Assembly (NCBI GenBank): GCA_950097015.1
Contig: CATNEN010000008.1
Span: 2,418,001 to 2,482,000 of the forward strand
Source of the DNA: Macrostomum hystrix
Lineage: Eukaryota; Animalia; Platyhelminthes
Direction of reading: 5' to 3'
Length of the DNA: 64,000 bases
Shown here: positions 917-26,224 of the stretch, one piece after another
Numbering within the stretch: the stretch's first letter is position 1
Layout: the number at the start of each line of letters is the position of its first letter
Position numbers and translations under genes: made by a program
Notes under the pieces: model-generated
The model's database searches: none
Told to the model about the DNA's origin: nothing
What the model saw: only the letters and a program-made list of their open reading frames with translations

Positions 917-2540
917 CTTCACTGCACTGCTGGGCTGCAAGTCAGAAATTATGATTCTCAATGGGACAGGCAGCAAGAGAAAACAACTGTTTCTGCAACT
1001 ACTTAAACTTAAACAACGACTGGTCCAGATTAGATATTGGGCCGACAAAAAACTGTCCAAGTCAAAGCGAACAGCCGCCCACCTCAGCGTTTTAGGTCTT
1101 GTGAAACAAGACAAGTGAGGGAGAGGAAGGGGGAGAGATAAAGATAAGCCAAACCCAGTCCGGGGGGTTTATGATGTTCAATGTACATTTGGAGCGAAAA
1201 TGAATGTACATAGACTGGGGACCTAACCTCACTTGTGCAAACACTGCTTTGGCCGGACCGGAGAGGCTCGCGGCGCCGATTAGTTACCCTTGGCCCTCTC
1301 CCCCAGAGTCTCCTCCATGACTTTGCACACATTGCTGGCTTGCAAAGACTTGCTCTCTTTGAATGTTTTCTTTTCGAACAATGCTCAGAGTCTCAGAAAA
1401 TTCTGATTAATTGTGGCTTAGATTTTTCATTAAAAAAAGACACGACTAAATAAGCCAGCTAAAGATTGTCATCTTTAGCTTTAAAAAAAAATTAACCCAG
1501 AAAAGCGCAAAACAGGGACAGCAGCAGTCAAGTAAATGTTTAATATGCGTAATGACTAGGCATCGGCATCGCAATCTCGGGTTCCCAGGATTTTATGATA
1601 TTCCCGGAATTTTAAAGCTAGTTTCCCGGCATGCTGTTCTACCTATTTTGGGATTAATTATTATATCCCATTATAATAATTATATTATATTATTTTTATT
1701 ATTCTGGGATTTGTTCTATGATGGGATTTTTCCTATAATACCGGGAATAGTCCCGACTTTCTCTATGAAAGTTTGATATAAGGCGCATTTGTTGTACAAA
1801 CGTTCACAATGCAACGATGATCGTTATTTTCATAATGAATAAATGCTTCCGTAAATTTGGCACATATACAAATGCTTAATTCGTAAATGCTAAAAACACA
1901 AAAGTTAATAAAATTTTTAAGAACTTTTTAAGTCTATCGTAAATACACACACAGTTAATTAATTTTAGTTTTATCAGAGCTTATATTTACTTGAAAATTA
2001 AAGGATACAAAATACTTCTATTATTGAAATCGCGTCATACAAAGAGGTAAAACAATTAACTAACTAAAAAGCAGTCAAATTGGAACGATTAAATTTAAGA
2101 CAGCTTCTAGTTACATATTAGCATTTTGGCGCGAATTTAAATTATTACAATTTAAGGCGATTGGGTCTAGTAATCTAGGATAAGTCAGAATAGGTTGCAA
2201 ACAGCTACAAATACTGGGTGCTTGAAGCTGAAGTATTAAATCAATAATTACTACTTATAGTTGACGCTTAGTCACTTTGTATCTGTACAGATAAACACTT
2301 TTTACATGGACAACGCGCATTGTTTAAAGAAATCACAGCGAATTCTAAATAGGAATTCAATACAGAGCATGGCATCGTGGCCGAACAATGCCAGCTCCGC
2401 TCAGCTAGGGTCGAAATTTGTCTACCAAATTCAATTGGTCGACGTCACGAATTTTCAATTTGCACTAAGATTTTTATAATACACCAAAATAATATGCCAA
2501 TCATGACCAAGTGAATTTGCTTAATGCGAGCCTATTCTCA

Positions 2541-3425
2541 TACCCCATCGACTCTACTGACGCACCAAGTGTCATTATTGATACCCCATCGACTCTACTG
2601 ACACACCAAGGGTCATTATTGATACCCCATCGACTCTACTGACGCACCAAGTGTCATTATTGATACCCCATCGACTCTACTGACACACCAAGGGTCATTA
2701 TTGATACCCCATCGACTCTACTGACACACCAAGTGTCATTATTGATACCCCCATCGACTCTACTGACACAACAAGTGTCATTATTGATACCCCATCGACT
2801 CTACTGACACACCAACTGTCATTATTGATACCCCATCGACTCTACTCACACACCAAGGGTCATTATTGATACCCCATCGACTCTACTGACACACCAAGTG
2901 TCATTATTGATACCCCATCGGCTCTACTGACACACCAAGTGTCATTATTGATACCCCATCGACTCTACTGACACACCAAGTGTCATTATTGATACCCCAT
3001 CGACTCTACTGAAACACCAAGTGTCATTATTAATACCCCATCGACTCTACTGACACACCAAGTGTCATTATTGATACCCCATCGACTCTACTGACACACC
3101 AACTGTCATTATTGATACCCCATCGACTCTACTCACACACCAAGGGTCATTATTGATACCCCATCGACTCTACTGACACACCAAGTGTCATTATTGATAC
3201 TCCATCGACTCTACTGACACACCAAGTGTCATTATTGATACCCCATCGACTCTACTGACACACCAAGTGTCATTATTGATACCCCATCGACTCTACTGAA
3301 ACACCAAGTGTCATTATTAATACCCCATCGACTCTACTGACACACCAACTGTCATTATTGATACCCCATCGACTCTACTGACACCCCATTGTCTGTCCTG
3401 ACACTACACCGACTCTACTGACACC
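2541..3425. repeat. 41-bp minisatellite, about 21 copies
   Basis: Unit ATACCCCATCGACTCTACTGACACACCAAGTGTCATTATTG in tandem, with no unique spacers. Confidence 0.95.
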
Positions 3426-3488
3426 ATGCAGAAAGTACAATGTAGCAAAATGGTTTTCGGATTTAAAGCGAATAGCAAATTTTTCTAA

Positions 3489-5880
3489 TCAAAACGTGGG
3501 AGAATCGGGCAGCTTCAAGTTCAACTTCATACTCTCACTGTCGCCCTCGCCCTGTGCGGTCCTGGGCGGCTTGGCCAACGACTCGGCGAGGGCCTCCAGC
3601 GCCGTTTGACTCTCAACAAAGCCGGCATCCGCGGCGGCCGCCAGTTCAACAGCCAGCTGGCCGCAGCGAAGCCTGTCAGCTGACCGCAGATCTCGCACTG
3701 TGTCGCAGCTGCCGTCCGCACTGCCGCCCCCGCCGCCGCCGCGCTGTGCAGTCAGATGAGTGCGACACACGGGCAGCACCTCCAATGGCAGGCACTCCAC
3801 GCTGCTGCGGTTGTTTTTACTGTCAGGATGCGAGTGCATTCGGATAGCAGTTGTGTCCGTCACCAGGGCCTGAGATTTTTATTGAGAGATATTGCGCTTT
3901 GTGTTTAAAAATATGCCATCAGACACAGCCATAGCTACAATCCCTATGCTCAGACACAGCCATAGCTACAATCCCTATGCTCAGACACAGCCTTAGCTAC
4001 AATCCCTATGCTCAGACACAGCCTTAGCTACAATCCCTATGCTCAGACACAGCCATAGCTACAATCCCTATGCTCAGACACAGCCATAGCTACAATCCCT
4101 ATGCTCAGACACAGCCTTAGCTACAATCCCTATGCTCAGACACAGCCATAGCTACAATCCCTATGCTCAGACACAGCCTTAGCTACAATCCCTATGCTCA
4201 GACACAGCATTAGCTACAATCCCTATGCTCAGACACAGCCTTAGCTACAATCCCTATGCTCAGACACAGCCTTAGCTACAATCCCTATGCTCAGACACAG
4301 CCTTAGCTACAATCTCTTTGCTCAGACACAGCCTTAGCTAAAATCTCTATGCTCAGACACAGCCATAGCTACAATCCCTATGCTCAGACACAGCCTTAGC
4401 TACAATCGCTATGCTCAGACACAGCCTTAGCTACAATCCCTATGCTCAGACACAGCCATAGCTACAATCCCTATGCTCAGACACAGCCTTAGCTACAATC
4501 CCTATGCTCAGACACAGCATTAGCTACAATCCCTATGCTCAGACACAGCCTTAGCTACAATCCCTATGCTCAGACACAGCCTTAGCTACAATCCCTATGC
4601 TCAGACACAGCCTTAGCTACAATCTCTATGCTCAGACACAGCCTTAGCTACAATCCCTATGCTCAGACACAGCCTTAGCTACAATCTCTATGCTCAGACA
4701 CAGCCATAGCTACAATCCCTATGCTCAGACACAGCCATAGCTACAATCCCTATGCTCAGACACAGCCTTAGCTACAATCCCTATGCTCAGACACAGCCTT
4801 AGCTACAATCCCTATGCTCAGACACAGCCTTAGCTACAATCCCTATGCTCAGACACAGCCTTAGCTACAATCCCTATGCTCAGACACAGCCTTAGCTACA
4901 ATCTCTATGCTCAGACACAGCCATAGCTACAATCCCTATGCTCAGACACAGCCTTAGCTACAATCCCTATGCTCAGACACAGCCTTAGCTACAATCCCTA
5001 TGCTCAGACACAGCCATAGCTACAATCCCTATGCTCAGACACAGCCTTAGCTACAATCCCTATGCTCAGACACAGCCTTAGCTACAATCCCTATGCTCAG
5101 ACACAGCCTTAGCTACAATCCCTATGCTCAGACACAGCCTTAGCTACAATCTCTATGCTCAGACACAGCCATAGCTACAATCCCTATGCTCAGACACAGC
5201 CTTAGCTACAATCCCTATGCTCAGACACAGCCTTAGCTACAATCTCTATGCTCAGACACAGCCTTAGCTACAATCTCTATGCTCAGACACAGCCTTAGCT
5301 ACAATCTCTATGCTCAGACACAGCCTTAGCTACAATCTCTATGCTCAGACACAGCCTTAGCTACAATCTCTATGCTCAGTGTCACCTGGGTGACGGGGTC
5401 CCTGGCGTGCTGCACCAGCACCAGCAGCAGGTCGGGCATGCCGAGCTCGTCGCACAGCCGTCTGTGAATGTGGGCCTCCTTGGCTGACAGCTGCGCCAGC
5501 TGCGGATGCTGCTCAGGCCGCAGGCTGTCGCCGATACGTCGCCGATACCAGCCAATGATGGCGGCGGCTTCGCAGCCAATAAAATCGGCTGCCGATCGAA
5601 CGGTTGAAGCGGCGCCGGCGACAGTTAGGCGAGGCAGCGGAACCAGAGACACAATGCGGTAGCGCCGCTTCGCAGTGGTAGCCGCCTCCGAGTGATCCGT
5701 GCGCACCACCTGCGATTCCAGATCCCGACTGCCCAATAGGAGGCCGTCTGGCGGGTCTAGCTGGGCGCACAGAGCCGCGAACTGTGGCGATGGGAATGTT
5801 ACAAAGCCAGCGGCTGTTGCTAAGCCTCCTCCTCCTCCGCCGTTGGTTGAATTGCCAAGTCGGCCGCTGTTGCTGGGCAT
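3489..5880 (-). CDS. ABRAXAS1: Abraxas-1-like (FAM175/BRCA1-A scaffold; MPN-minus domain, C-terminal SPTF), about 291 aa
   Basis: Exons 5880-5386 and 3869-3489, phase-0 intron (CAG|gtgaca...ctcag|GCC). Motifs DGLLLG, IIGWYRRR, EAHIHRRL and DLLLVLV match Abraxas EGFLLG, VVGWYKFR, ERLLHKNL and DLVFLLL as recalled. The protein ends ...DSPTF*, like human Abraxas ...RSPTF*. Confidence 0.8.
3919..5380. repeat. 31-bp minisatellite, about 47 copies, filling the Abraxas-like intron
   Basis: Unit AGACACAGCCTTAGCTACAATCCCTATGCTC. Confidence 0.97.
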
Positions 5881-9104: not shown

Positions 9105-12100
9105 GTCACTTGCTTTCCTCTCCCATCCTCTGCTTTCCTCTCCCATCCTCTGCTTTCCTCTCCCATCCTCTGCTTTCCTCTCCCATCCTCTGCTTTCCTC
9201 TCCCATCCTCTGCTTTCCTCTCCCATCCGCTGCTTTCCTCTCCAATCCTCTGCTTTCCTCTCCCATCCGCTGCTTTCCTCTCTCATCCTCTGCTTTCCTC
9301 TCCCATCCTCTGCTTTCCTCTCCCATCCTCTGCTTTCCTCTCCCATCCGCTGCTTTCCTCTCTCATCCTCTGCTTTCCTCTCCCATCCTCTGCTTTCCTC
9401 TCCCATCCTCTGCTTTCCACTCCCATCCTCTGCTTTCCTCTCCCATCCTCTGCTTTCCTCTCCCATCCGCTGCTTTCCTCTCCAATCCTCTGCTTTCCTC
9501 TCCCATCCGCTGCTTTCCTCTCTCATCCTCTGCTTTCCTCTCCCATCCTCTGCTTTCCTCTCCCATCCTCTGCTTTCCTCTCCCATCCGCTGCTTTCCTC
9601 TCTCATCCTCTGCTTTCCTCTCCCATCCTCTGCTTTCCTCTCCCATCCTCTGCTTTCCACTCCCATCCTCTGCTTTCCTCTCCCATCCTCTGCTTTCCTC
9701 TCCAATCCTCTGCTTTCCTCTCCCATCCTCTGCTTCCCACTCCCATCCTCTGCTTTCCACTCCCATCCTTTCCACTCCCATCAGTTGCTTTCCTCTGCCA
9801 TCCTCTGCTTTCCACTCCCATCAGTTGCTTTCCACTCCCATCCTCTGCTTTCCTCTCTCATCCTCTGCTTTCCTCTCCCATCCGCTGCTTTCCTCTCCAA
9901 TCCTCTGCTTTCCTCTCTCATCCTCTGCTTTCCTCTCCCATCCTCTGCTTTCCTCTCCCATCCTCTGCTTTCCACTCCCATCCTCTGCTTTCCTCTCCCA
10001 TCCTCTGCTTTCCTCTCCAATCCTCTGCTTTCCTCTCCCATCCTCTGCTTTCCTCTCCAATCCTCTGCTTTCCACTCCCATCCTCTGCTTTCCTCTCCCA
10101 TCCTCTGCTTTCCACTCCCATCCTCTGCTTTCCACTCCCATCCTCTGCTTTCCTCTCCCATCCTCTGCTTTCCTCTCCCATCCTCTGCTTTCCTCTCCCA
10201 TCCTCTGCTTTCCTCTCCCATCCTCTGCTTCCCACTCCCATCCTCTACTTTCCTCTCCCATCCTCTGCTTCCCACTCCCATCCTCTGCTTTCCACTCCCA
10301 TCCTTTCCACTCCCATCAGTTGCTTTCCTCTGCCATCCTCTGCTTTCCAGTCCCATCAGTTGCTTTCCACTCCCATCCTCTGCTTTCCTCTCTCATCCTC
10401 TGCTTTCCTCTCCCATCCGCTGCTTTCCTCTCCAATCCTCTGCTTTCCTCTCCCATCCGCTGCTTTCCTCTCTCATCCTCTGCTTTCCTCTCCCATCCTC
10501 TGCTTTCCACTCCCATCCTCTGCTTTCCTCTCCCATCCTCTGCTTTCCTCTCCCATCCTCTGCTTTCCTCTCCCATCCTCTGCTTTCCACTCCCATCCTC
10601 TGCTTTCCTCTCCCATCCTCTGCTTTCCTCTCCCATCCTCTGCTTTCCACTCCCATCCTCTGCTTTCCTCTCCCATCCTCTGCTTTCCTCTCCCATCCTC
10701 TGCTTTCCACTCTCATCCTCTGCTTTCCTCTCCCATCCTCTGCTTTCCACTCTCATCCTCTGCTTTCCTCTCCCATCCTCTGCTTTCCTCTCCCATCCTC
10801 TGCCTTCCTCACACATCCTCTGCTTTTCTCTCCCACCCTCTGCTTTCCTCTCCCATCCTCTGCTTTCCTCTCCCATCCTCTGCTTTCCACTCCCATCCTC
10901 TGCTTTCCTCTCCCATCCTCTGCTTTCCTCTCCCATCCGCTGCTTTCCTCTCCAATCCTCTGCTTTCCTCTCCCATCCGCTGCTTTCCTCTCTCATCCTC
11001 TGCTTTCCTCTCTCATCCTCTGCTTTCCACTCCCATCCTCTGCTTTTCTCTCCCATCCTCTGCTTTCCTCTCCCATCCTCTGCTTTCCACTCCCATCCTC
11101 TGCTTTCCTCTCCCATCCGCTGCTTTCCTCTCTCATCCTCTGCTTTCCACTCCCATCCTCTGCTTTCCTCTTCCATCCTCTGCCTTCCTCACACATCCTC
11201 TGCTTTTCTCTCCCACCCTCTGCTTTCCTCTCCCATCCTCTGCTTTCCTCTCCCATCCTCTGCTTTCCACTCCCATCCTCTGCTTTCCTCTCCCATCCTC
11301 TGCTTTCCTCTCCCATCCTCTGCTTTCCACTCCCATCCTCTGCTTTCCTCTCCCATCCTCTGCTTTCCTCTCCCATCCTCTGCTTTCCACTCTCATCCTC
11401 TGCTTTCCTCTCCCATCCTCTGCTTTCCACTCTCATCCTCTGCTTTCCTCTCCCATCCTCTGCTTTCCTCTCCCATCCTCTGCTTTCCTCTCCCATCCGC
11501 TGCTTTCCTCTCTCATCCTCTGCTTTCCTCTCCCATCCTCTGCTTTCCTCTCCCATCCTCTGCTTTCCACTCCCATCCTCTGCTTTCCTCTCCCATCCTC
11601 TGCTTTCCTCTCCCATCCGCTGCTTTCCTCTCCAATCCTCTGCTTTCCTCTCCCATCCGCTGCTTTCCTCTCTCATCCTCTGCTTTCCACTCCCATCCTC
11701 TGCTTTTCTCTCCCATCCTCTGCTTTCCTCTCCCATCCTCTGCTTTCCTCTCCCATCCTCTGCTTTCCTCTCTCATCCTCTGCTTTCCACTCCCATCCTC
11801 TGCTTTCCTCTTCCATCCTCTGCCTTCCTCACACATCCTCTGCTTTTCTCTCCCACCCTCTGCTTTCCTCTCCCATCCTCTGCTTCCCACTCCCATCCTC
11901 TACTTTCCTCTCCCATCCTCTGCTTCCCACTCCCATCCTCTGCTTCCCACTCCCATCAGTTGCTTTCCTCTCCCATCCTCTGCTTCCCACTCTCATCCTC
12001 TGCTTTCCTCTCTCATCCTCTGCTTCCCACTCTCATCCTCTGCTTTCCTCTCCCATCCTCTGCTTCCCACTCTCATCCTCTGCTTTCCTCTCTCATCCTC

Positions 12101-14430
12101 TGCTTTCCACTCTCATCCTCTGCTTTCCACTCCCATCCTCTGCTTTTCTCTCCCATCCTCTGCTTTCCTCTCCCATCCTCTGCTTTCCTCTCCCATCCTC
12201 TGCTTTCCTCTCTCATCCTCTGCTTTCCACTCCCATCCTCTGCTTTCCTCTTCCATCCTCTGCCTTCCTCACACATCCACTGCTTTTCTCTCCCACCCTC
12301 TGCTTTCCTCTCCCATCCTCTGCTTCCCACTCCCATCCTCTACTTTCCTCTCCCATCCTCTGCTTTCCACTCCCATCCTCTGCTTTCCTCTCCCATCCTC
12401 TGCTTTCCTCTCCCATCCTCTGCTTTCCTCTCCCATCCTCTGCTTTCCACTCCCATCCTCTGCTTTCCTCTCCCATCCTCTGCTTTCCTCTCCCATCCTC
12501 TGCTTTCCACTCCCATCCTCTGCTTTCCTCTCCCATCCTCTGCTTTCCTCTCCCATCCTCTGCTTTCCACTCTCATCCTCTGCTTTCCTCTCCCATCCTC
12601 TGCTTTCCACTCTCATCCTCTGCTTTCCTCTCCCATCCTCTGCTTTCCTCTCCCATCCTCTGCCTTCCTCACACATCCTCTGCTTTTCTCTCCCACCCTC
12701 TGCTTTCCTCTCCCATCCTCTGCTTTCCTCTCCCATCCTCTGCTTTCCACTCCCATCCTCTGCTTTCCTCTCCCATCCTCTGCTTTCCTCTCCCATCCGC
12801 TGCTTTCCTCTCCAATCCTCTGCTTTCCTCTCCCATCCGCTGCTTTCCTCTCTCATCCTCTGCTTTCCTCTCTCATCCTCTGCTTTCCACTCCCATCCTC
12901 TGCTTTTCTCTCCCATCCTCTGCTTTCCTCTCCCATCCTCTGCTTTCCACTCCCATCCTCTGCTTTCCTCTCCCATCCGCTGCTTTCCTCTCTCATCCTC
13001 TGCTTTCCACTCCCATCCTCTGCTTTCCTCTTCCATCCTCTGCCTTCCTCACACATCCTCTGCTTTTCTCTCCCACCCTCTGCTTTCCTCTCCCATCCTC
13101 TGCTTTCCTCTCCCATCCTCTGCTTTCCACTCCCATCCTCTGCTTTCCTCTCCCATCCTCTGCTTTCCTCTCCCATCCTCTGCTTTCCACTCCCATCCTC
13201 TGCTTTCCTCTCCCATCCTCTGCTTTCCTCTCCCATCCTCTGCTTTCCACTCTCATCCTCTGCTTTCCTCTCCCATCCTCTGCTTTCCACTCTCATCCTC
13301 TGCTTTCCTCTCCCATCCTCTGCTTTCCTCTCCCATCCTCTGCTTTCCTCTCCCATCCGCTGCTTTCCTCTCTCATCCTCTGCTTTCCTCTCCCATCCTC
13401 TGCTTTCCTCTCCCATCCTCTGCTTTCCACTCCCATCCTCTGCTTTCCTCTCCCATCCTCTGCTTTCCTCTCCCATCCGCTGCTTTCCTCTCCAATCCTC
13501 TGCTTTCCTCTCCCATCCGCTGCTTTCCTCTCTCATCCTCTGCTTTCCACTCCCATCCTCTGCTTTTCTCTCCCATCCTCTGCTTTCCTCTCCCATCCTC
13601 TGCTTTCCTCTCCCATCCTCTGCTTTCCTCTCTCATCCTCTGCTTTCCACTCCCATCCTCTGCTTTCCTCTTCCATCCTCTGCCTTCCTCACACATCCTC
13701 TGCTTTTCTCTCCCACCCTCTGCTTTCCTCTCCCATCCTCTGCTTCCCACTCCCATCCTCTACTTTCCTCTCCCATCCTCTGCTTCCCACTCCCATCCTC
13801 TGCTTCCCACTCCCATCAGTTGCTTTCCTCTCCCATCCTCTGCTTCCCACTCTCATCCTCTGCTTTCCTCTCTCATCCTCTGCTTCCCACTCTCATCCTC
13901 TGCTTTCCTCTCCCATCCTCTGCTTCCCACTCTCATCCTCTGCTTTCCTCTCTCATCCTCTGCTTTCCACTCTCATCCTCTGCTTTCCACTCCCATCCTC
14001 TGCTTTTCTCTCCCATCCTCTGCTTTCCTCTCCCATCCTCTGCTTTCCTCTCCCATCCTCTGCTTTCCTCTCTCATCCTCTGCTTTCCACTCCCATCCTC
14101 TGCTTTCCTCTTCCATCCTCTGCCTTCCTCACACATCCACTGCTTTTCTCTCCCACCCTCTGCTTTCCTCTCCCATCCTCTGCTTCCCACTCCCATCCTC
14201 TACTTTCCTCTCCCATCCTCTGCTTCCCACTCCCATCCTCTGCTTTCCACTCCCATCCTTTCCACTCCCATCAGTTGCTTTCCTCTGCCATCCTCTGCTT
14301 TCCACTCCCATCAGTTGCTTTCCACTCCCATTAGTTGCTTTCCACTCCCATTAGTTGCTTTCCACTCCCATTAGTTGCTTTCCACTCCCAACCTCTGCTT
14401 TCCTCTCCCATCCTCTGCTTTCCTCTGCCA
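9105..14430. repeat. 20-bp polypyrimidine/polypurine satellite, about 265 copies, with a 1860-bp higher-order duplication
   Basis: Unit TCCTCTGCTTTCCTCTCCCA. The variant pattern of 10501-12360 recurs at 12361-14220, and identical ORFs in the track are offset by 1860. Confidence 0.97.
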
Positions 14431-14591
14431 TTATCTTCCTTCCTACTGAATCCCACACTTCTTCGCACCGTCTCCTTTCTCCTTCAAGTTTTTCTGACGA
14501 ACTTTGACAGTTTTGACAACTTTGACAGCATGCCGAACATAACGAAAGTAGAATGCAGCACAGTTATATTTCTCAAGTTCTTCTTAAGTGT

Positions 14592-17500
14592 CTATCCCGA
14601 CAGCCCATCGTCCCAGTCGCCATAAATATCGTCATCAACTGTGGCTATTTTAGGCGCAACAGGATTTCCGCTAGGTCGAACAACGCCGCCACCACCGCGG
14701 CCGCCGCGACGGTGTTCAGTTCGCAAAGCTTCTAGCCGGCAACGCAAGGCCTCAACGTCGGCATTGTTGACGCAACGAAACGCCACAGCCGTGGCCGTCT
14801 CATTTCTTGTGTCGAACGACAGGCGAAACAAGCCGGACATGTTGGCCAGGTGCTGCTGAAGGCTGCGCAGAGCCTCCTGGCAGCGAGACAGGCCAGCCGA
14901 GTCGCCGCTGCGTCTCGCCGACTCCACATCGCTGGCTGTGAAGCCCAGAAGCTCTGGCAGGTGATTTTAGTTGGGTATAATTGTGTGGTTAGCCTAGGGC
15001 AGCTAGGGGCCAGCAAAGTTGGCCCGCGAGCCAGATGCGGCCCTCGAAGCTCCCAAATCCTGCCAGTTGCCCCTTACGACGCCTATAGTATCTTGTCTCA
15101 TATTTTCCTTTTCTCATCTCTCCCGTGTCTCATCTATTCCGTGTCTCATCTCTCCCGTGTCTCATCTATCCCGTGTCTCATCTATCCCGTGTCTCATCTA
15201 TCCCGTGTCTCATCTATCCCGTGTCACATCTATCCCGTGTCATCTATCCCGTGTCTTATCTATCGTGTCTCATCTCACCACTGTCTCATCTCACCACTGT
15301 CTCATCTCACCACTGTCTCATGTCACCACTGTCTCATCTCACCACTGTCTCATCTCACCACTGTCTCATCTCACCACTGTCTCATCTCACCACTGTCTCA
15401 TCTCACCACTGTCTTTTCTCTTCTCTGGCTTATCTCTTCCCTTTCTGATCTCTTCTCTGCGGCGGATAGCTCAGTCAGTAAGGTGTCGGACTCTGGATCA
15501 GATGGTCCTGGGTTCGACTCCCGACTTAGTCTAGAACTATTCGTGCTAGCCTTTGGCAAGCTGCTTTGCCCTGATGTACAGCCTACTCAGCTGCAAGTGA
15601 GTACCGAAATTTCGTCGGGTAATAATAATTCCGGCTGGCGTGGAATAAAGCAGCTCAGTGCGGCAATTCAGTGGTGGTTTGGATGCTGCCGATATGTATC
15701 GAAAAAATAAATTCGATTGCTGACACGCGGCTGTCAACCGGTGTCCGAGAGAACCGGGGATTACATTAGGTGTGCAGACCCCACCTGCTAGTGTGCTAGA
15801 CACACTACACCTGCAATAGCCCTTAAGTCTAGTGTCAATTGTTATATTATTATTAATATTATCTCTTCTCTGGCTTATATCTTCCCTCTCTCATCTATTC
15901 CCCGTCTTATCTCTCTCCTGTCCTACAGTTTATGCGGCCCGCTTTCGTCTTTTAGGTTGTCTCCGTGGCCCGCACGCTAACAAGTTTGCCGAACCCTGGC
16001 CAAGGGTTTAAAGCTTTGGACTCTTGAGGAAGAGGTCGCAAGTTTGAATCTTAGAAATTTTAGTTATTTAGAAGTTGGAAGTTATTAAAAAGTTTAGATT
16101 ACAATTTCTTAAATCTAACAAGATCAGTCTACAACAAAGACTTGGAGAACAAGGATTACGAGCATTGAAACAGAATCTCACCAGTGAGCAGCTGATCGTG
16201 CAGGTCGCAATTAATAGTACACGTGGCATCCGCCAGCATGCAGTGCAAACTGAATTTTCCGTCAGTAACCTCGAAGCGGCCGCGCAAAGCCATCAGATAG
16301 CCGCGAACAGTGTACTCTCTGAGCTGCGGCCCAGGCTCAGCTAGCCAGGTGTACACATCTTTCAGGTAGACAAACGGGGCGCTGTCTGCTTTGCAGCTGC
16401 TGCTGTTACTGTTGCTAGTCGTTGAGACAGGAGTTGTAGGCAGCTCAGCTATTTGAGAAAGAAGATATGAAATATTGACAACTTAACAATGTGACAGTGC
16501 TCACTACTTTAAAGCAGTGACCTCACACTTCTCACACCTTATCGACTAGACTCACATGGAATCTCAACTTATAGAATAGTCACACATGGAATCTAACCTT
16601 AGAGACTAGTGTCACACTCAATCTCACCTTAAAGACTAGTCTCACACTCAATCTCACCTTAGAGACTAGTCTCACACTCAATCTCACCTTAGAGACTAGT
16701 CTCACACTCAATCTCACCTTAGAGACTAGTCTCACACTCAATCTCACCTTAGAGACTAGTCTCACACTCAATCTCACCTTAGAGACTAGTCTTACACTCA
16801 ATCTCACCTTAGAGACTAGTCTTACACTCAATCTCACCTTAGAGACTAGTCTTACACTCAATCTCACCTTAGAGACTAGTCTTACATGGAATATCACCTT
16901 AGAGACTATTCTTACATGGAATCTCACCTTAGAGACTAGTCTTACATGGAATCTCACCTTACAGACTAGTCTTACATGGAATCTCACCTTACAGACTAGT
17001 CTTACATGGAATCTCACCTTAGAGACTAGTCTTACATGGAATCTCACCTTAGAGACTAGTCTTACATGGAATCTCACCTTACAGACTAGTCTTACATGGA
17101 ATCTCACCTTAGAGACTAGTCTTACATGGAATCTCACCTTAGAGACTAGTCTTACATGGAATCTCACCTTAGAGACTAGTCTTACATGGAATCTCACTTT
17201 ACAGACTAGTCTTACATGGAATCTCACCTTAGAGACTAGTCTTACATGGAATCTCACCTTACAGACTAGTCTTACATGGAATCTCACCTTAGAGACTAGT
17301 CTTACATGGAATCTCACCTTACAGACTAGTCTTACATGGAATCTCACCTTAGAGACTAGTCTTACATGGAATCTCACCTTAGAGACTAGTCTTACATGGA
17401 ATCTCACCTTAGAGACTAGTCTTACATGGAATCTCACCTTATAGTCTAGTCTTATGGAATCCCTCCATTTATTAATTTAGTAATTATGAACCAATAATAA

Positions 17501-20344
17501 TTAAACTAGTTGTTATAACGACAATGGCATATATTTATACGGGGACTAACCGACTCTGCCTTCGTTTTGAACCCTAGGCCGTTTGTTAACAGGAAACAAT
17601 GGCTCCCGATCAGCTGTTGCCGCTGGTGGCGCCGCCGCAGCAGCTTCCAATTCGTCACAGTCCAGACCTTCGATGGCTTGGGCAAATAACAGATCGTCGG
17701 CTTCTAGAGCTTCTTGAACTGACATCAGATGCGATTGCGGTTGATGTTGCTGCTGCTGCTGCTGCATTGGTGCTTTACTAGTACCAAGCCGTCTAAAGAT
17801 AAGATAAAGATGAGTGTGCAATTATCTGATCTATCATGTATTTTTTAATGGAGTTTCAATCAAAGTAGCTTACTGTCGCTGCTGCTGGTGCCTTGACGGC
17901 TGCAGTCCCTGTGTCTCCGCATTGTCGTCTGCTTCGCTATTATCATCTTCAAACGGATCGAATCCGCCTAGCAGTTCACGGACATTGTCACCATTCTGAC
18001 TGTCTAGCAATGAATTGATTGGCCTATTATTGGGATTGCTAGCTGCTCTAGGAAGGGAGAAATTTGACACTGGCTGATTGCCGCTCAGATTGGCTGCCGA
18101 GCGGGAAGAAGATAGAGCACCGGAATCGCTTGGAAACGGACGAGAGCGTATATTACTATTACTACTATTACTACTACTATTAATATTATTACTATTATTA
18201 TTAATGTTGTTTAGCCCGACAGCACTATTGGTAGCTAGCTGATGACGGCTGTAATTATTGAAACATGTCTCGTGTGGTTGCTGCTGCTGCCGTTGCTGAT
18301 GATGTGGCGGCGGCGGTGGCGGAGTCGGGCGTGAAACTTCCCGCACAGCTAGAGTACCCTGGTAGAATTATAAGCAGGTTAATTTATTATTTAATAATTA
18401 ATACTTTGATAAAGTAAAGGGGTTCTAGCCTTGTGGTGAGAGCGTCGGACTCACGACTTGAAGGTCGGGGGTTCGATTCCCGACTCCACTGTAACAGTTT
18501 GTGTCGTTCAGCAAGACACTTAATTCTGCATCGCTTCTGTTCACCCAGCTGTTTAATGGGTACCAGCATTAGCTGGGGTAATTGAGGGTTGGGTGTGGCA
18601 TCCCGACCCAGTCCATGGACTGAACAGCCGTACGCAGCCTTCAGATGCGCCGCGCAATAGCTGCGGCTGTGCTGTCGGCTGCACATCTGGCCCAATTGGG
18701 GCAGGTGTAATCAATTATTAATTTTATTATTTCATATAAAATTAACTAACAGCTCGTACCTGACTCCAATCATTTCCTGCAAAATACTGCTGTTGTTGCC
18801 GGTGAGTATTTCGATTTTGGCTAGCGCTGAGGTCGGCAAACAGCCGAGAAGTCACCTCGGCTGCGGACGGTGCCTACAATAGATTTGTTTCGCAGTTTGC
18901 GTATCATTTTTATTCGTGTGAGACTTGTGCAGAAATGGCGGGGGCTAACAACACTTCCCAAATGGGATCGAGACACAGGTAGTCTAGGGTCTAAACTTTA
19001 AGGTTTTCTTTACCTGAGCATCTGGAAGCTTTGGCAGCTCTAGTAGAGCCTGGTGGGGTGTCTGTTATTCAACCAAAGAGTCTGGTAGTGATTTCTCTAA
19101 CAGAGCTACGGGCGCCAGCTCTAATAAAAGTCCTAAAATTCCATGAAAAGCGCAAGAATTCTCTCAAAAATCGCATTTTTACATGCAATTGCGGCGGTGG
19201 TTCGAATCCCAGCCGGCGCAGAGCTGCTAGAAGCAGATTCTCCTGACTGCGCTCGGCCACCAGCTCGTCAACTTGGCCGCCGAGCACCTGGACGCCATCT
19301 GGCGACGTCAGCATGGCGATGCCGCGTCTAATCAGCAGAGGCGGCGATAGTCGCAGCTTGCAGCCGGGCGCCAGGGCGACACTGAGCTGTGGCATTGGCC
19401 GGCACTCGACTGCTCTCAGCTGGCTGCAACCGTCTGTTAGAGTCAGAAGCAGCATGCGGCCGCCCTTCGGCTCGTCCCACTGACCATACCCGCCGCGGTC
19501 GCCTCCGCCGCCTCCTTGGCCACCGCGGCCGCGGCCTCCGCCACCACCTCCACCGCGACCGCGACCTGCACCGCCGCTTCCACCTCCGCCACCGCCGCTC
19601 CAGCCTCCGTCGCCTTCTTCGCTAGTTGTTATCTATTAAGGATATTTTAAACAGATAGATAGCAACGACAGCTAGCCCAGTTGCGTCAAATGTACCGCAG
19701 ATTGCAAGGCTGTTCAGTCTGTGGACTGGGAGGGTCGCCACAAGCTAACGCTGCCAATCACTACAGTAACCATCTTAGGCTGGGTGAACTGAAATGGCTT
19801 GCTCAAGGAAAAAAATAGTCTCCCTTCGGCTGCGATTCGAACGTTCGACCTCTCAGTGAGAAGTCCGAATCCTAGAACACTGGCTTACGGACTTCACTAT
19901 ATCTTCACCACATCAATATCGGAAGTACTGACATGGAGGCACTGTCTACCGACTGGGCCCCCCACATCTAGACTAAATTTCTTTCTAAACTGGCAGGTCT
20001 AGAATTACCTCCAAGTTAGAATTCTCATCTCCGCGACACTTCCTGTACTGACTGTACAGAGACTGGCTGACATCCATCACCGATTCCAGTTGAAGCACAA
20101 TCTTTTTAGTCAGCTGGAATCGGTCTGCATTGGCCAATTCTCCAGGCAGACAGGGAGTCTCAAACTCTCGCAGATCGGAGTGCAGGTACTGCTCATACAG
20201 CAGGCTGCGCAGCTCGTCTGGGGCAAACGACTCTGGCTGACGGCCGTGCTCCTGACAGAGCCAGTCGCGACCAGCGTCCAGCCAGCCAGGTGGCACCACA
20301 AGAGACTGGGCATTGAACCAGTCCTGATCACTACCGCGGCTTGT
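14592..20344 (-). CDS. RMI1: RecQ-mediated genome instability protein 1 (RMI1), about 750 aa
   Basis: Exons 20344-20009, 19632-19183, 18873-18760, 18358-17874, 17792-17551, 16448-16182 and 14953-14592 total 2256 nt in frame, all GT-AG. N-terminal motifs: VPPGWL, EQYLHSDLR, VMDVSQSLYSQ. OB1: RMLLLTLTDG...VQVLGGQVDEL. OB2: PFVYL...LLGFT. No genomic ATG was found for the first exon. Confidence 0.93.
15000..15998. mobile_element. hAT-like non-autonomous element (MITE) carrying an internal 15-bp minisatellite, in an RMI1 intron
   Basis: Degenerate TIRs (cag[ctag]gggccagcaaagtt / agtttgccgaaccctg) and an imperfect 8-bp TSD (gcctaggg/gccaaggg). Subterminal sequences are shared with the 52844-53966 element. 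Confidence 0.7.
15459..15860 (+). mobile_element. tRNA-derived SINE, family B (CORE-like centre), nested in the MITE
   Basis: A-box-like TAGCTCAGTCAG, B-box GGTTCGACTCC and an AT-rich tail. An 11-bp TSD ATCTCTTCTCT flanks it at 15448-15458 and 15861-15871. Confidence 0.8.
16545..17455. repeat. 30-bp minisatellite, about 30 copies, in an RMI1 intron
   Basis: Unit ATCTCACCTTAGAGACTAGTCTTACATGGA, with CACACTCA variants in the left part. Confidence 0.95.
18419..18730 (+). mobile_element. tRNA-derived SINE, family A (CORE-like domain), in an RMI1 intron
   Basis: tRNA-like head with B-box GGTTCGATTCC, CORE-like segment at 18501-18560 and a (TTA)-rich tail. A similar second copy lies at 51485-51797. 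Confidence 0.85.
19775..19890 (-). mobile_element. SINE 5' fragment (tRNA head plus start of CORE-like domain)
   Basis: The minus strand reads ...GTTCGAATCGCAG...CCTTGAGCAAGCCATTTCAGTTCACCCAGC. Confidence 0.6.
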
Positions 20345-21282
20345 CTGCAAAGTGATTCAACACTCTCTCAAAGATAGCAGGGACAAGGATATGGTATGTA
20401 AAGGCAAGATTCCAACAAAAAATATGTCTCATAAATAGAGTATTTCAATAATTACGAATGAGACTCATAAAATGTCTGTTAATCACTGACTTAACAGTTC
20501 AGTATGGCATAGCTGTTGAGGGCCTATGCTATATTGAAAAGGCATTTGTTGCTTGTAAATAAATAATGATAGCAAGTATACCCAAAAAGAATAGTTAAAA
20601 AAAGTCTATAAATAACACAAAATAGAAAATGCAAAAACCTGAAAGAAATATTTATAGTTTTACTCAAAGGAGCATTTTAATTTAAAGGCTAGATAGAAGA
20701 CACAGGCTTCTTGAACTTTACTCCTATAAAATGGTATAGCTTTGATTGCTTGATAACTAATTTGTTCCAACCTGCTTTAACAATTTTAAATGACCTCATT
20801 GAAATTTCAACAACTACCCTAACTTGGCTATAATAGGACTAGGATAACAAGACTAGCCAAACAGGACCAGGGGGCCTGGGGTTCTGGGTTGCATAAATTT
20901 AATTTAGAAACTAAGGTAATAATAAGGACTAGATAATCTACAATACAAACATGGCAATCTGTTAATAGTAACATTGCCTTATTAAATTCAATAATATATT
21001 TAACATATCATGATCCCTGCCAGGCATTTTGATGCCTGTATTTTGGTACCAGGTACCTTTTTGATGCATTTCAGTTATCAGTTTTAAATATGTCGATGCT
21101 AATGTGCTTAAATACTTCCTGCCCATACATGCCCAACAACCATCCGAACTGGACGGGTAAAATGGCTGCCTGCCAAGGTAAGTCGCAAAATCGAAAATGT
21201 AAAAAAACAAAAATTGGGGGAAGAAAGAAAGAAGAGGAAGAGAAAAAGAAAATAAAGGAGGGGGAAAAGAGAGAGAGAGGAA

Positions 21283-21855
21283 GGGGCGAGTGGGTCAGCG
21301 GCTAACGTCGCTGCCTCGCACTCCAAAGGACGCTAGTTCGATTCACCCTTCAAGTCACGATTAATTTCAGTACTTGTTGGGGGGGTTTGGACAGTAGCGA
21401 CCGGCGGAGGTGCACCATATTTCGTGCAATCAAAGCTTGAAAAATAGCTTCGCTCCTACCTCTCTGTGTGCCTGTTCTGCGTTGTATGAGTTCTGTGCGT
21501 TGGCGCTGGGGCGTTAGACCTTGTGGGGGGTGGCTGGGGGGCGGGTGTACACCGCCGCGCGCTCATCTGGATTTCCGTCAGCGCGATTGGATAAAGTGTA
21601 CACTCGTCACCCGGCCCCCCCTGAGGACTGATTTCTTATCAGCCTTCCATCCCGGCTTGGTCTGCTCTGTGCGTGTGCGGGCCTGGGGTGAGAGGCACTC
21701 CGGCTGCCGCCCCCTTCCCCGCTTGGCTTGCTGCTGTGTGTGTGTGAGTGCCTGCTCAGGGGAGGCGGCGCGATGGGCGGCTCTCGCCTAGTTCGCCGGC
21801 CTGGGGGCATGCCGTTCCTGTGTTTGTGCGTCAAGTGCCCCAGGCCCCCCTGCAA
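21283..21855 (+). mobile_element. tRNA-derived SINE, family D, apparently full length (about 570 bp)
   Basis: A-box-like TGGGTCAGCGG and B-box GTTCGATTC (21336-21344). The 3' part recurs, reversed, at 46853-47212 with a TSD. Confidence 0.7.
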
Positions 21856-22750
21856 AGTAAGTAAGAGGAAAAGAGGAGAGAGGAAAAGAGGAGAGAGAGG
21901 AAAAGAGGAGAGAGAGGAAAAGAGGAGAGAGGAAAAGAGGAGAGAGAGGAAAAGAGGAGAGAGGAAAAGAGGAGAGAGGAAAAGAGGAGAGAGGAAAAGA
22001 GGAGAGAGAGGAAAAGAGGAGAGAGGAAAAGAGGAGAGAGGAAAAGAGGAGAGAGAGGAAAAGAGGAGAGAGGAAAAGAGGAGAGAGAGGAAAATAGGAG
22101 AGAGGAAAAGAGGAGAGAGAGAAAGAGGAGAGAGAGGAAAAGAGGAGAGAGGAAAAGAGGAGAGAGGAAAAGAGGAGAGAGGAAAAGAGGAGAGAGAGGA
22201 AAATAGGAGAGAGGAAAAGAGGAGAGAGAGAAAGAGGAGAGAGAGGAAAAGAGGAGAGAGGAAAAGAGGAGAGAGGAAAAGAGGAGAGAGGAAAAGAGGA
22301 GAGAGAGGAAAAGAGGAGAGAGGAAAAGAGGAGAGAGAGGAAAAGAGGAGAGAGGAAAAGAGGAGAGAGAGGAAAAGAGGAGAGAGAGGAAAAGAGGAGA
22401 GAGGAAAAGAGGAGAGAGAGGAAAAGAGGAGAGAGGAAAAGAGGAGAGAGAGGAAAAGAGGAGAGAGAGGAAAAGAGGAGAGAGGAAAAGAGGAGAGAGA
22501 GGAAAAGAGGAGAGAGGAAAAGAGGAGAGAGAGGAAAAGAGGAGAGAGAGGAAAAGAGGAGAGAGGAAAAGAGGAGAGAGAGGAAAAGAGGAGAGAGGAA
22601 AAGAGGAGAGAGAGGAAAAGAGGAGAGAGAGGAAAAGAGGAGAGAGGAAAAGAGGAGAGAGAGGAAAAGAGGAGAGAGGAAAAGAGGAGAGAGAGGAAAA
22701 TAGGAGAGAGGAAAAGAGGAGAGAGAGAAAGAGGAGAGAGAGGAAAAGAG
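21856..22750. repeat. Purine-rich A/G simple repeat forming the tail of SINE D
   Basis: AGAGGAAAAGAGGAG-type units of 10-17 nt. Confidence 0.95.
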
Positions 22751-22962
22751 AAAAAGGCAAGAAAAGTCATCTCTGGTCATATTTTAAATAAAAAAATGTG
22801 TTTCATAGAGCAAAAATATGCTATGCCATTAAATTTAATTGAGCTAACCCTTCACTACACTAATAAGAAACTTATTAGTTGCCGTTTATATAGCTTTAAA
22901 TACAGGCTTTAAAATATGATATTAAGTGTCACTTACTGGCACAAGTTCGAATATGTGTTTTG

Positions 22963-23874
22963 AAACAGAGTCTTGGAAAAACCCAAAGATGAGAAAGCTG
23001 TGAAGAGAATAGGCCCAACTCACTCAGAAGTCTTCAGTTAGATTTTTATGATGCCAATTTATCAAAAAATAGTAATCAACACACTTTGATAGCCTGCGCT
23101 TTATATTATTATTGTTATTAATTTTTTGTAGTATTGGAGGCGTGCTAACGTTTATACATTTGTGTTTTGTACACAACACTAGAGCAGTAGCCTCTAAATT
23201 TGTTTTATTTTTATATTTTACTATCTTTTTAACTGTCACACATAGAAACCTATACATAGCCATAAGCCATATAGCCGAACAGCCATACAAAGCTATTAGA
23301 CTACATGGCATCAAAAAACAATGCCTGCAGCCTACTGTCAGCTGTGTGATGAGATGTAGACCTGGGCTATTTTAGGCAGGCAATTTATTAATATTAGGTC
23401 CATAGTCTGCTTAGCTATATAACTATCTTTTTTCCTGGTCTCTAATTCAGATCTACCATCTAATCACAGTAACTTGTAGGGAACAAATTTATATTAAAAA
23501 ACACAATGAATAAGAAACGATGAGTGATAGGTCCAGGCCTACAGTCTAGCGTGTAGACTGTTCAGGGCCTACTAAAAATTATAATGAACAATGTTCCTAC
23601 TTACAAGTAAACAAATTAACTCAAATTAGCTCCAAGAACTCCTTAAAACAATTTAGAAGCTACTGCTCTAGTGGTGTGTACAAAACACAAATGTACGAAC
23701 GGTAGCACATTCATAGGAACTACAAAAAAATATAAAGCGCAGGCTATCAAAGTGTGCTGATTACTATTTTTTGGTAAATTAGCTTCATCAAAAGCTAACG
23801 GAAGACTTCTGAGTGAGTTAGGCCTATTCTCTTCACAGCTTTCTCATTCTTTTGGTTTTTCTAAGACTCTGTTT
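22963..23874. mobile_element. Fold-back / MITE-like element with about 250-bp inverted arms
   Basis: 22963-23210 is the reverse complement of about 23643-23874. The same terminus recurs at about 27755-27790. Confidence 0.7.
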
Positions 23875-23879
23875 GGACT

Positions 23880-26224
23880 GAAAGTGAAACTGAAAGCACT
23901 GCAGATCAAATGTTTTCAACAGCATCGATTCTTTTTCTGTCACAATTGCCGCAGCGATATCGATTCTCTCATAATTCGATAGGATAGTATTCGCTCTCTC
24001 CCAGTGGCCTAGTTCAGTGCAGTTTCCTCTTAGTTGACCTCCAATCGCGCCGGTTATGCCGCATGTGAAATAAAGCTCAATGTACTCGACTGGGAACACT
24101 TTAGGTTGATCCTGCTGACAGAGAATTATCAAATAAGTCTGCGTTTCCCTTCTGGTACAAATATTAATGTCTACTTCTCTTGCGAGAAACACAGCTTCAC
24201 GGCATTGTACCTGCACTGTGAGAGGATCTCCATTCGGGAGCCGCAGCTTATTCTTCTTCTTTGCCAGGGAAACTTTTTCGATGATCAGAGTCCACACCTG
24301 CGTGTCACTAGTCCCTGCTCGACATGAGACACAATTTGAGCAAATTTTGTGAGATCTTTTAAAACTCTGTTTGGTCAGATTTGTGCCAGGCGGTATCAAA
24401 TCATACTCATCTTGCCCAATAGCTGTTTGCAGTTGAAAGTGCAGAGTGACGGGCAGTACAGGAAGTACTTGAAAGTGTCCTCCGCTCAAATTTTCGGTAA
24501 ATATGGTGAACTCAGCTATTCCATTGTTGACGAAGTGGGGCACAAATCGGTGTGACTCCGGAAATTCAACCGTGCCATTGAACACATCCTGTCCTTCCAT
24601 ATTGGTTGCCACCAATTCAATGGTAAGAATATTACCCGAGTCCTTTTGCTCCAGCTGGCCTTGTTCATTCACTATCACATTTTGTAAGCCTGGATCAAAG
24701 TCGGAATCCAGTTTTATGTGACATTTCTTCTCACCAATTCAATTCATTTGACACTCTCCACCAGTTAAATGGCCATGAGGCGACCATCCTGTTCTCAACG
24801 AAACTCCACGCAGAGTGACGTCAGCTTGGACCACAAAGTGCAGCACGGCCTTCGTTTCACGGCGACCGGAAGCCCGTGGCTGCTCTTGCTGCTGCTGCTG
24901 AAATGATTGAATTTCGATGCCTTTTACTTCTATAATTCGTATTTAAGAAACAAATCTTGATCCTAAAGAACTTGCCAAGAAGGAGGGAACAGAAGTTAGT
25001 CGTTGTGCCTATGCTGGGGCGGTCTTGAGTGAAGCATTATTAGTTGATGGAATGGGTAAAGCAGCACGGCCTGCATGTCTGCAACTTACTTTACTTTGGA
25101 CTGTGGTTTAAATTTGAATATAGGAACTAAAAAAATCCTACGCCACTAATGTTTAGGAGGAATAGTGAAAAGAAGTAAAAGAACAGTGCCATATACTGTG
25201 CGTACTGTTTAATTTTTTAAAACAAAAAATCTTTAAAGCTTTCTTTTTTTAAATTCAGCATTGAGACAGTTTGGATTAGATAGCGAACGCAGCCACCAGA
25301 ATATAAATAAACGAAATACTCGGCGTAAAGCGTCTTGACACTTCAGCTCCACTTCATAACATTTGATAGGCGTTTGAGAGAAGGTGTCATTAAAAATACG
25401 AGTACAAATACAATAAGGGTTACACAGAAATTAGTGTTACTTTATAGGAAAACTATTCTGTGATTATTGAGAAAAATATGAAATGGTCCTTTTTTATTTT
25501 TAGTTACAATTTGAAATCCGATACTCTAGCACAAGCAAAATTCTAACTTCAACTTCTCTCCTTCGTCCTCGGGGTCGCTCACCAGCTCCCTCAGGCAGCT
25601 CCACACGGCCATCATGAAGCAGAACCAGGCCTCCGCAGCTGGGCATCGGTCCTGAGCTTCCTCACTCCGCTGCAGAGCCTCCAGTCGAGCATGAATAATT
25701 TTGACTGAGCTTTTTAGTAGAGCCTTTAGATCCGACTCACTCAGATTCCATCTGCGGTCTGCGACACTGTTCGCCAGTTCTGTCAGCTCGTCTGAGAACT
25801 TAACGCTACTGAGATTGCCGTCCTGAAGCTTCTTGACGCATTCGAAAACCTCGGATTCCTGACAGTCTGTCAGATCTCGCTCTCTCAGTTTGCTTAGAAC
25901 AGAGGATTCTTCTGATTCCCATTCTGATTTGCTTAGGGACTGTTTCGCTGCTGACGCCCTTGGCACCAGCCATCTGGCGAAGATGGTTCTTACACTGCAG
26001 TGGCTGGTCAAGCTGACAGGCAGGTTGCGAATGCAGCACAGGGAATACGTTAGATCTGTCAGCACTGTTGCTTCACAATAGTTTGGATTTGTCCTGCCCA
26101 GTTTCAAGGCTTTTTCAGTCTTCTTCGGTTGAATATCTTCTGAAATTGACTTCACTGTTTTTATTGCTACGTTGCTCTTTTGCTTTTGCAAATTGATCGA
26201 GTTTAACATCATCGTCTCAGACAT
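23880..26224 (-). pseudogene. Truncated copy of the unidentified gene at 31813-35112
   Basis: Exon 1 is 26224-25583 and exon 2 starts at 24897. An in-frame TGA at 24739-24741 replaces TTA in the other copy. Homology breaks at about 23887, next to the fold-back element. Confidence 0.8.

What the first reader, a model, noticed from the sequence alone, without database searches (positions are those of the whole stretch)
20009..20360. RMI1 lacks a genomic start codon; a spliced leader ending in AUG would supply it in frame
Seen: the first RMI1-homologous exon begins at 20344, right after a ctttgcag acceptor, in phase 0 (ACA AGC CGC...). There is no ATG, and an in-frame TGA lies just upstream at 20359-20357. 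Adding only Met gives MTSRGSDQDWF..., about the same N-terminal length as human RMI1 (MNVTSIALRAETWL). Established: platyhelminth spliced leaders end in AUG, which can act as the initiator. Inference: RMI1 translation may depend on trans-splicing for its start codon.
Basis: partly seen in the sequence, partly recalled or inferred. Interest (0 to 1): 0.75.

Follow-up and report, generated by a model that had tools for sequence, protein, structure and literature searches.

The report
RMI1 start codon from spliced leader
In this flatworm, the DNA-repair gene RMI1 has no start codon of its own, and its transcripts begin at the splice acceptor with a short foreign 5' tag, so the AUG that ends the trans-spliced leader most likely starts the protein; this mechanism has been known in flatworms since 2006.

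Summary
On the minus strand, an RMI1 exon begins at 20344 after ctttgcag, in phase 0. An in-frame TGA lies at 20359-20357, and there is no in-frame ATG before exon codon 90.

Spliced RNA contigs from three runs use exactly this acceptor. Each carries exactly 22 further letters that lie nowhere in 17500-21800. No joint reaches an upstream exon, and RNA depth just upstream of the acceptor is zero. Met plus the exon puts the conserved N-terminal tryptophans in the same register as RMI1 of other animals. Published Macrostomum spliced leaders end in ...TTGCATG, and the final G explains why the contigs match one base past the exon start.

The weak point is that the tool did not print the 22 letters, so I did not read their identity with the leader. 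A far-upstream 5' exon ending in ATG is therefore unlikely but not excluded.

The mechanism is known (Cheng et al. 2006), and the Macrostomum genome paper mentions it. Earlier notes of this scan report the same thing for several other genes of this genome (POP5, TAF10, NF-YB, OTUD6). RMI1 is a new member of a known kind and of modest interest. The seven-exon model gives a 716-residue protein.

The parts
20357..20359 (-). In-frame TGA in the outron, five codons upstream of the first exon codon
20345..20352 (-). Splice acceptor ctttgcag. TTGCAG fits the Macrostomum trans-splice acceptor motif [T/C]TNCAG. The final g (20345) is the base shared with the last G of the leader's ATG.
   Evidence: One search gives the sequence. 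One search gives the motif from PMC8629364. In one search the contig matches stop at 20345 in X2, X3 and X4.
20009..20344 (-). RMI1 coding exon 1: 336 nt, 112 codons, phase 0 at both ends. It holds the N-terminal helical domain and the start of OB-fold 1, and it has no usable ATG.
   Evidence: RNA contigs cover it with zero differences (records 8, 12 and 16).
19183..19632 (-). Exon 2: a Gly/Arg-rich insert followed by the rest of OB-fold 1.
   Evidence: Pfam RMI1_N_C scores 71 bits. The joint 19632/20009 is seen in X2. Frame checked.
18760..18873 (-). Exon 3
   Evidence: Joints in X2, X3 and X4. Frame checked.
17874..18358 (-). Exon 4: a low-complexity linker.
   Evidence: Joints in X2, X3 and X4. 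Frame checked.
17551..17792 (-). Exon 5: contains a polyQ run.
   Evidence: The joint 17792/17874 is seen in three runs. The donor gttagt is shown.
16182..16358 (-). Exon 6 (inferred): first half of the C-terminal OB-fold.
   Evidence: Pfam RMI1_C, E = 2e-5.
14592..14935 (-). Exon 7 coding part (inferred): second half of the C-terminal OB-fold and the TAG stop.
   Evidence: Pfam RMI1_C, E = 1e-4.
20346..21800 (-). Presumed outron. No RNA joint runs from here into 20344, and RNA depth is zero at 20380-20667.
   Evidence: tables 2, 5 and 8.

Best explanation
RMI1 of this Macrostomum flatworm is transcribed with an outron. The outron is removed by spliced-leader trans-splicing at the acceptor cag|ACA (20345/20344). 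The leader ends in AUG and the acceptor is in phase 0, so the mature mRNA reads ...UUGCAUG ACA AGC... The leader's AUG is the first AUG of the message and opens a 716-codon frame, Met-Thr-Ser-Arg-Gly-Ser-Asp-Gln-Asp-Trp..., that encodes a complete RMI1. The protein has the N-terminal helical domain, OB-fold 1 with a Gly/Arg-rich insert, a linker and the C-terminal OB-fold. An untrans-spliced transcript has an in-frame TGA five codons upstream and no ATG, so it cannot make the full protein. What is shown: the gene structure, use of the acceptor, a constant foreign 5' tag and the register of the N-terminus. What is inferred: that the tag is the spliced leader and that ribosomes start at its AUG.
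For: Sequence: the phase-0 acceptor, the in-frame TGA and the lack of an ATG. The first in-frame ATG is codon 90 and lies behind three out-of-frame ATGs. Starting there would delete the whole RMI1_N_N domain.

RNA: X2 record 8 (2383 nt) is spliced across exons 1-5 with canonical GT..AG introns. X3 record 12 and X4 record 16 (347 nt each) cover exon 1. All three stop matching the genome at 20345 and carry exactly 22 more letters. No joint to 20346-21800 is listed, although 20-22-letter sides are listed for other joints. Depth is 0 at 20380-20667.

The match running one base past the exon (g at 20345) but not two fits a tag ending ...TG, as in ...GCATG.

A constant tag shorter than 30 letters is what 31-letter-word contigs give at a sequence shared by thousands of mRNAs (my inference).

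Literature: the M. lignano leader and the M. hystrix and M. cliftonense leaders all end ...CAATTTATTGCATG. 10-20% of M. hystrix genes are trans-spliced. The trans-splice acceptor motif is [T/C]TNCAG. The flatworm leader AUG serves as an initiator (Cheng et al. 2006, cited).

Homologues: among 125 RMI1 relatives that start with M, the Trp of the conserved W-L-x-A-C-type motif sits at residue 22 in 19 and at 23 in 32. Met plus the exon puts it at 22.

No upstream ATG within 3.5 kb runs in frame into a GTRAG donor.
Against: I therefore did not read the tag's identity with the leader. The stretch laid ended at 21800, so a cis exon further upstream is not excluded by the joints table. The species was not verified here; earlier notes call it Macrostomum hystrix. 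No SL RNA gene or leader-like sequence lies in the window. The position three bases before the leader's AUG is a pyrimidine, which is a weak initiation context. No proteomic or ribosome-profiling data are available.
Confidence: 0.82

Rival explanations
1. A short cis-spliced 5' exon lies beyond 21800 (or elsewhere), ends in ATG or ATG plus a few codons, and is joined to 20344. Under this reading the start codon is genomic.
For: The tag letters were not read, and only 17500-21800 was laid. Fifty ATG-to-GT phase-0 combinations exist in 20345-23832 by chance.
Against: In three independent runs the contigs stop after exactly 22 extra letters. That is expected at a sequence shared among many mRNAs, not at an ordinary 5' exon with 15-18x depth. 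None of the 50 candidates has a GTRAG donor. The base before the shared G is not A, whereas cis exon ends usually read AG (my inference). The region 21864-22750 is a simple AG-rich array.
Confidence: 0.1
2. Translation starts at the internal in-frame ATG (exon codon 90, 20077) or at a non-AUG codon such as the outron TTG (20350-20348), giving a truncated or unconventional RMI1.
For: An in-frame ATG exists at 20077, and a TTG lies two codons before the exon.
Against: Starting at codon 90 removes the conserved helical domain and the first OB strands, which are well conserved here. Three out-of-frame ATGs precede it, and the first opens a 67-codon frame. The TTG lies in sequence absent from the RNA contigs.
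Confidence: 0.04
3. The contigs' 5' tags are assembly or adapter artefacts, and the true 5' end is unknown.
For: Logan contigs cannot show true starts, and the tag is short.
Against: The same length appears in three runs and in contigs of different size and orientation. The genomic match ends exactly at a canonical acceptor.
Confidence: 0.04

Closest known systems
[quoted passage not shown] 2006, J Biol Chem 281:733; Schistosoma mansoni)
   Same: The leader ends in AUG, the acceptor is in frame with the ORF, the recipient gene has no ATG of its own for the conserved N-terminus, and an in-frame stop lies in the outron.
   Different: This is a free-living macrostomid rather than a schistosome, and the recipient is RMI1. 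The evidence here is transcript contigs with an unread tag, not cloned cDNAs or translation assays.
Macrostomum SL trans-splicing (Wudarski et al. 2017; Ustyantsev and Berezikov 2021, PMC8629364; Wiberg et al. 2023, PMC10468722)
   Same: The acceptor motif is the same ([T/C]TNCAG), and the leader ends ...TTGCATG. The authors note that the final ATG is likely a start codon for some genes.
   Different: Those papers give genome-wide counts. As far as I read, they do not single out RMI1 or list genes that depend on the leader for their AUG.
Other leader-AUG-dependent genes noted by this scan in the same genome (POP5, TAF10, NF-YB, OTUD6, mitochondrial TyrRS)
   Same: The same anatomy: an ATG-less N-terminus starting at a phase-0 acceptor, and transcript contigs ending at the acceptor with a foreign tag.
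   Different: A different gene. These are unchecked AI notes and count as leads only.
RMI1 (BLAP75) of animals, e.g. human RMI1 in PDB 3nbi and 4cgy
   Same: An N-terminal helical domain plus OB-fold 1 and a C-terminal OB-fold. The length (716 aa) matches the 700-750 aa of the best homologues.
   Different: The start codon is not encoded in the gene. A roughly 45-residue Gly/Arg-rich insert lies in OB-fold 1, and identity to the best relatives is only 38-42% in exon 1.

Membership tests
Genes whose initiator AUG is donated by the flatworm spliced leader | The organism has a spliced leader whose last three bases are AUG | tested here: inconclusive
   The published M. hystrix, M. cliftonense and M. 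lignano leaders all end ...TTGCATG. That the window comes from a Macrostomum rests on earlier scan notes. No SL gene lies in the window.
Genes whose initiator AUG is donated by the flatworm spliced leader | The mature mRNA carries non-genomic leader sequence joined at the acceptor of the first coding exon | tested here: inconclusive
   Three runs show contigs whose genomic match stops at 20345 and that carry exactly 22 further letters not lying in 17500-21800. There is no cis joint. The letters themselves were not displayed.
Genes whose initiator AUG is donated by the flatworm spliced leader | The acceptor is in phase 0, so the leader AUG is in frame with the conserved ORF | tested here: met
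   The frame is continuous over seven exons, giving 715 codons plus a stop.
Genes whose initiator AUG is donated by the flatworm spliced leader | There is no genomic in-frame ATG that could give the conserved N-terminus, and a stop lies upstream in frame | tested here: met
   TGA at 20359-20357. The first in-frame ATG is codon 90. The N-terminal register matches homologues when only Met is added.
Genes whose initiator AUG is donated by the flatworm spliced leader | Translation actually initiates at the leader AUG | not testable with these tools
   This needs N-terminal proteomics, ribosome profiling or reporter assays.
RMI1 (RecQ-mediated genome instability protein 1) | N-terminal helical domain plus OB-fold 1 (Pfam PF21000, PF08585) | tested here: met
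   PF08585 scores 71.1 bits on exon 2 and 27.5 bits on exon 1 (cut-off 23). PF21000 scores 20.5 bits, just under its cut-off of 23. Human RMI1 structures match at E = 1e-13. In the representative library, 156 relatives have E <= 0.001.
RMI1 (RecQ-mediated genome instability protein 1) | C-terminal OB-fold (Pfam PF16099) that binds RMI2 | tested here: inconclusive
Two exon pieces match complementary halves of the profile: positions 24-75 at 24.7 bits and 80-143 at 22.1 bits. Each is under the cut-off of 27 because the domain is split by an intron.

The most novel reading that the evidence does not exclude
RMI1 synthesis is strictly gated by trans-splicing: only leader-capped transcripts can make the protein. 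Production of this genome-stability factor, a partner of BLM and TOP3A, would then be tied to spliced-leader supply. In Macrostomum, spliced-leader trans-splicing is reported to be enriched among stem-cell (neoblast) genes. The missing ATG would then be a maintained regulatory feature shared across Macrostomum species, not a neutral loss.
Probability: 0.12. Interest if true: 0.45.

Novelty: new member of a known kind. Interest (0 to 1): 0.25.

Why it matters
The main value is for annotation. Gene finders that require a genomic ATG will truncate this RMI1 to codon 90 or invent an upstream exon, and the same will hold for the other leader-dependent genes of Macrostomum genomes. Biologically, it adds a conserved DNA-repair gene to the list of flatworm genes that cannot be translated correctly without trans-splicing. 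The mechanism itself has been established since 2006, so it opens no new question.

Tried and rejected
1. Reading the 5' tag letters. Read laying listed only the best-supported loose ends and hid 181, including the one at 20345, and its cap is one call.

2. Fetching the transcript through its protein. The word search with exon 1 found nothing. The exhaustive representative search found no protein above 42% identity. No Macrostomum RMI1 is therefore in those libraries, and the look-up of encoding contigs had nothing to look up.

4. A leader-like sequence in the window: none, with up to 3 mismatches.

5. Rfam over the whole window: no family.

6. tRNA scan of 14000-24000: none.

7. The bacterial promoter and terminator scan is irrelevant for a eukaryote and I ignored it.

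8. An operon with the upstream minus-strand ORF (23833-24678): a 3.5 kb gap full of repeats makes this unconvincing, and I did not test it further.

9. The low-depth contigs at 20761-21099 were considered as an upstream exon. I rejected this because there is no GT donor at the contig end and no joint into 20344 is listed.

Full report
**Observation.** Read on the minus strand, the sequence is ...TGA ATC ACT TTG CAG|ACA AGC CGC GGT....
- The acceptor AG is at 20346-20345 and the exon starts at 20344.
- The exon stays open for 112 codons, up to a gtaatt donor after 20009.
- The TGA at 20359-20357 is in frame, and no ATG lies between it and the exon.
- The exon matches Pfam RMI1_N_N at residues 10-60 and the start of RMI1_N_C. 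The next exon matches the rest of RMI1_N_C at 71 bits.
- Human RMI1 structures 3nbi and 4cgy match at E about 1e-13.
- The first in-frame ATG is exon codon 90 (20077). It lies behind three out-of-frame ATGs, and the first of those opens a 67-codon frame. Starting at codon 90 would remove the whole helical domain.

**Gene model.** Spliced contigs from three public runs (X2, X3, X4, one study) lie on the gene, which shows these runs are RNA. With the canonical cut positions, the exons are:

| Exon | Coordinates (minus strand) | Basis |
|---|---|---|
| 1 | 20344-20009 | seen in RNA contigs |
| 2 | 19632-19183 | seen in RNA contigs |
| 3 | 18873-18760 | seen in RNA contigs |
| 4 | 18358-17874 | seen in RNA contigs |
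| 5 | 17792-17551 | seen in RNA contigs |
| 6 | 16358-16182 | inferred |
| 7 | 14935-14592 | inferred |

- Exons 6 and 7 are inferred from splice sites, frame and Pfam RMI1_C matches.
- All seven exons have AG acceptors. All six introns begin with GT.
- The frame is continuous, with 715 codons plus TAG.
- The 2383-nt contig of X2 is fully accounted for: 23 + 2148 + 212 nt of 3' UTR. It ends where a 20-bp satellite begins.
- I checked phases exon by exon and did not build or search the joined protein.

**The 5' end.**
- X2 record 8 (2383 nt), X3 record 12 and X4 record 16 (347 nt each) all stop matching the genome at 20345. Each has exactly 22 more letters (table 8).
- No joint from 20345 into 20346-21800 is listed, although joints with only 20-22 letters on one side are listed elsewhere in the same output.
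- RNA depth is zero at 20380-20667.
- The match running one base beyond the exon (the g of the acceptor) but not two is what a tag ending ...TG gives. The published leaders end ...GCATG.
- A 5' tag of constant length below 30 letters in three assemblies is what 31-letter-word contigs produce where an mRNA runs into a sequence shared by thousands of other mRNAs. With about 7,000 trans-spliced genes, some other gene is expected to share the first 6-7 letters after the leader. That leaves 23-24 leader letters, and 23 are observed. This arithmetic is my inference, not a tool result.
- An ordinary cis 5' exon at 15-18x depth would not end at the same letter three times.

**N-terminal register.** The exhaustive protein search returned 156 relatives with E <= 0.001. 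None exceeds 42% identity, so no Macrostomum RMI1 is in the library.
- Among the 125 that begin with M and carry the conserved W-L-x-A-C-type motif, its Trp sits at residue 22 in 19 proteins and at residue 23 in 32.
- Met plus the exon places it at residue 22.
- Human RMI1 is about 4 residues longer at the N-terminus.

Nothing beyond a methionine is therefore missing from the N-terminus.

**Literature.**
- The M. lignano leader (35 nt) and the M. hystrix (43 nt) and M. cliftonense (45 nt) leaders share the 3' end ...GAAGACTCAATTTATTGCATG (PMC8629364; PMC10468722 Table S3).
- The genome paper's Figure 2 legend says the final ATG is likely part of the leader and a start codon. Its supplement says the leader AUG is sometimes used as the initiation site.
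- The top trans-splice acceptor motif in M. lignano is [T/C]TNCAG. The acceptor here is TTGCAG.
- Use of the flatworm leader AUG as initiator was shown in Schistosoma by Cheng et al. 2006 (cited in PMC9851317).

**What remains open.**
- The 22 letters were not displayed and the reads tool was exhausted. Identity of the tag with the leader is therefore inferred.
- A cis exon beyond 21800 is not formally excluded. Within 20345-23832 no ATG runs in frame into a GTRAG donor.
- The species was not verified here. Earlier notes of this scan call the genome Macrostomum hystrix. They also report the same start-codon arrangement for POP5, TAF10, NF-YB, OTUD6 and a mitochondrial TyrRS on other pieces of this genome. 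The scan has therefore seen this phenomenon before on other DNA. I treat those notes as leads, not support.

**Verdict.** This is a new member of a known kind. Its value lies mainly in correct annotation.

Noticed in passing
window 9111-14431: A 5.3-kb satellite of a 20-bp unit (TGCTTTCCTCTCCCATCCTC, about 267 copies, 90% matches) with extreme strand skew. It begins about 160 nt after the RMI1 stop codon, and the RMI1 transcript contig appears to end at its edge.
   Followed up: partly
window 16535-17461: A 30-bp tandem repeat of 31 copies (95% matches) fills most of RMI1 intron 5.
   Followed up: no
window 18364-18795: A segment inside RMI1 intron 3 has RNA contig depth of 1,600-3,700, against about 17 for the RMI1 exons, with many partial contigs and loose ends. 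It looks like a highly expressed dispersed repeat. Similar high-depth partial matches occur at 21244-21800 upstream of the gene. ARAGORN and Rfam find no tRNA there.
   Followed up: partly
window 19456-19632: The Gly/Arg-rich (RGG-like) insert at the start of exon 2 is transcribed and in frame. The X2 contig spans it with no differences. The X3 and X4 contigs break inside it, probably because of its internal repeats.
   Followed up: partly
window 21864-22750: An AG-rich tandem array (units of 15, 32 and 47 bp, about 890 bp) lies 1.5 kb upstream of the RMI1 acceptor, between RMI1 and the next minus-strand ORF.
   Followed up: no
window 23833-24678: A minus-strand 281-codon ORF ends 3.5 kb upstream of RMI1 and has no Pfam match. 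It may be the last exon of the upstream gene. I did not test whether it shares a primary transcript with RMI1.
   Followed up: no
window 15041-15477: A 16-bp tandem repeat array (TCTCATCTCACCACTG-like, about 19 copies) lies in RMI1 intron 6.
   Followed up: no
window 20761-21099: Low-depth RNA contigs (3.6-10x) lie in the presumed outron in all three runs. One has 47 unplaced letters at 20761, with no canonical splice site there. They could be outron fragments or a diverged repeat copy.
   Followed up: partly
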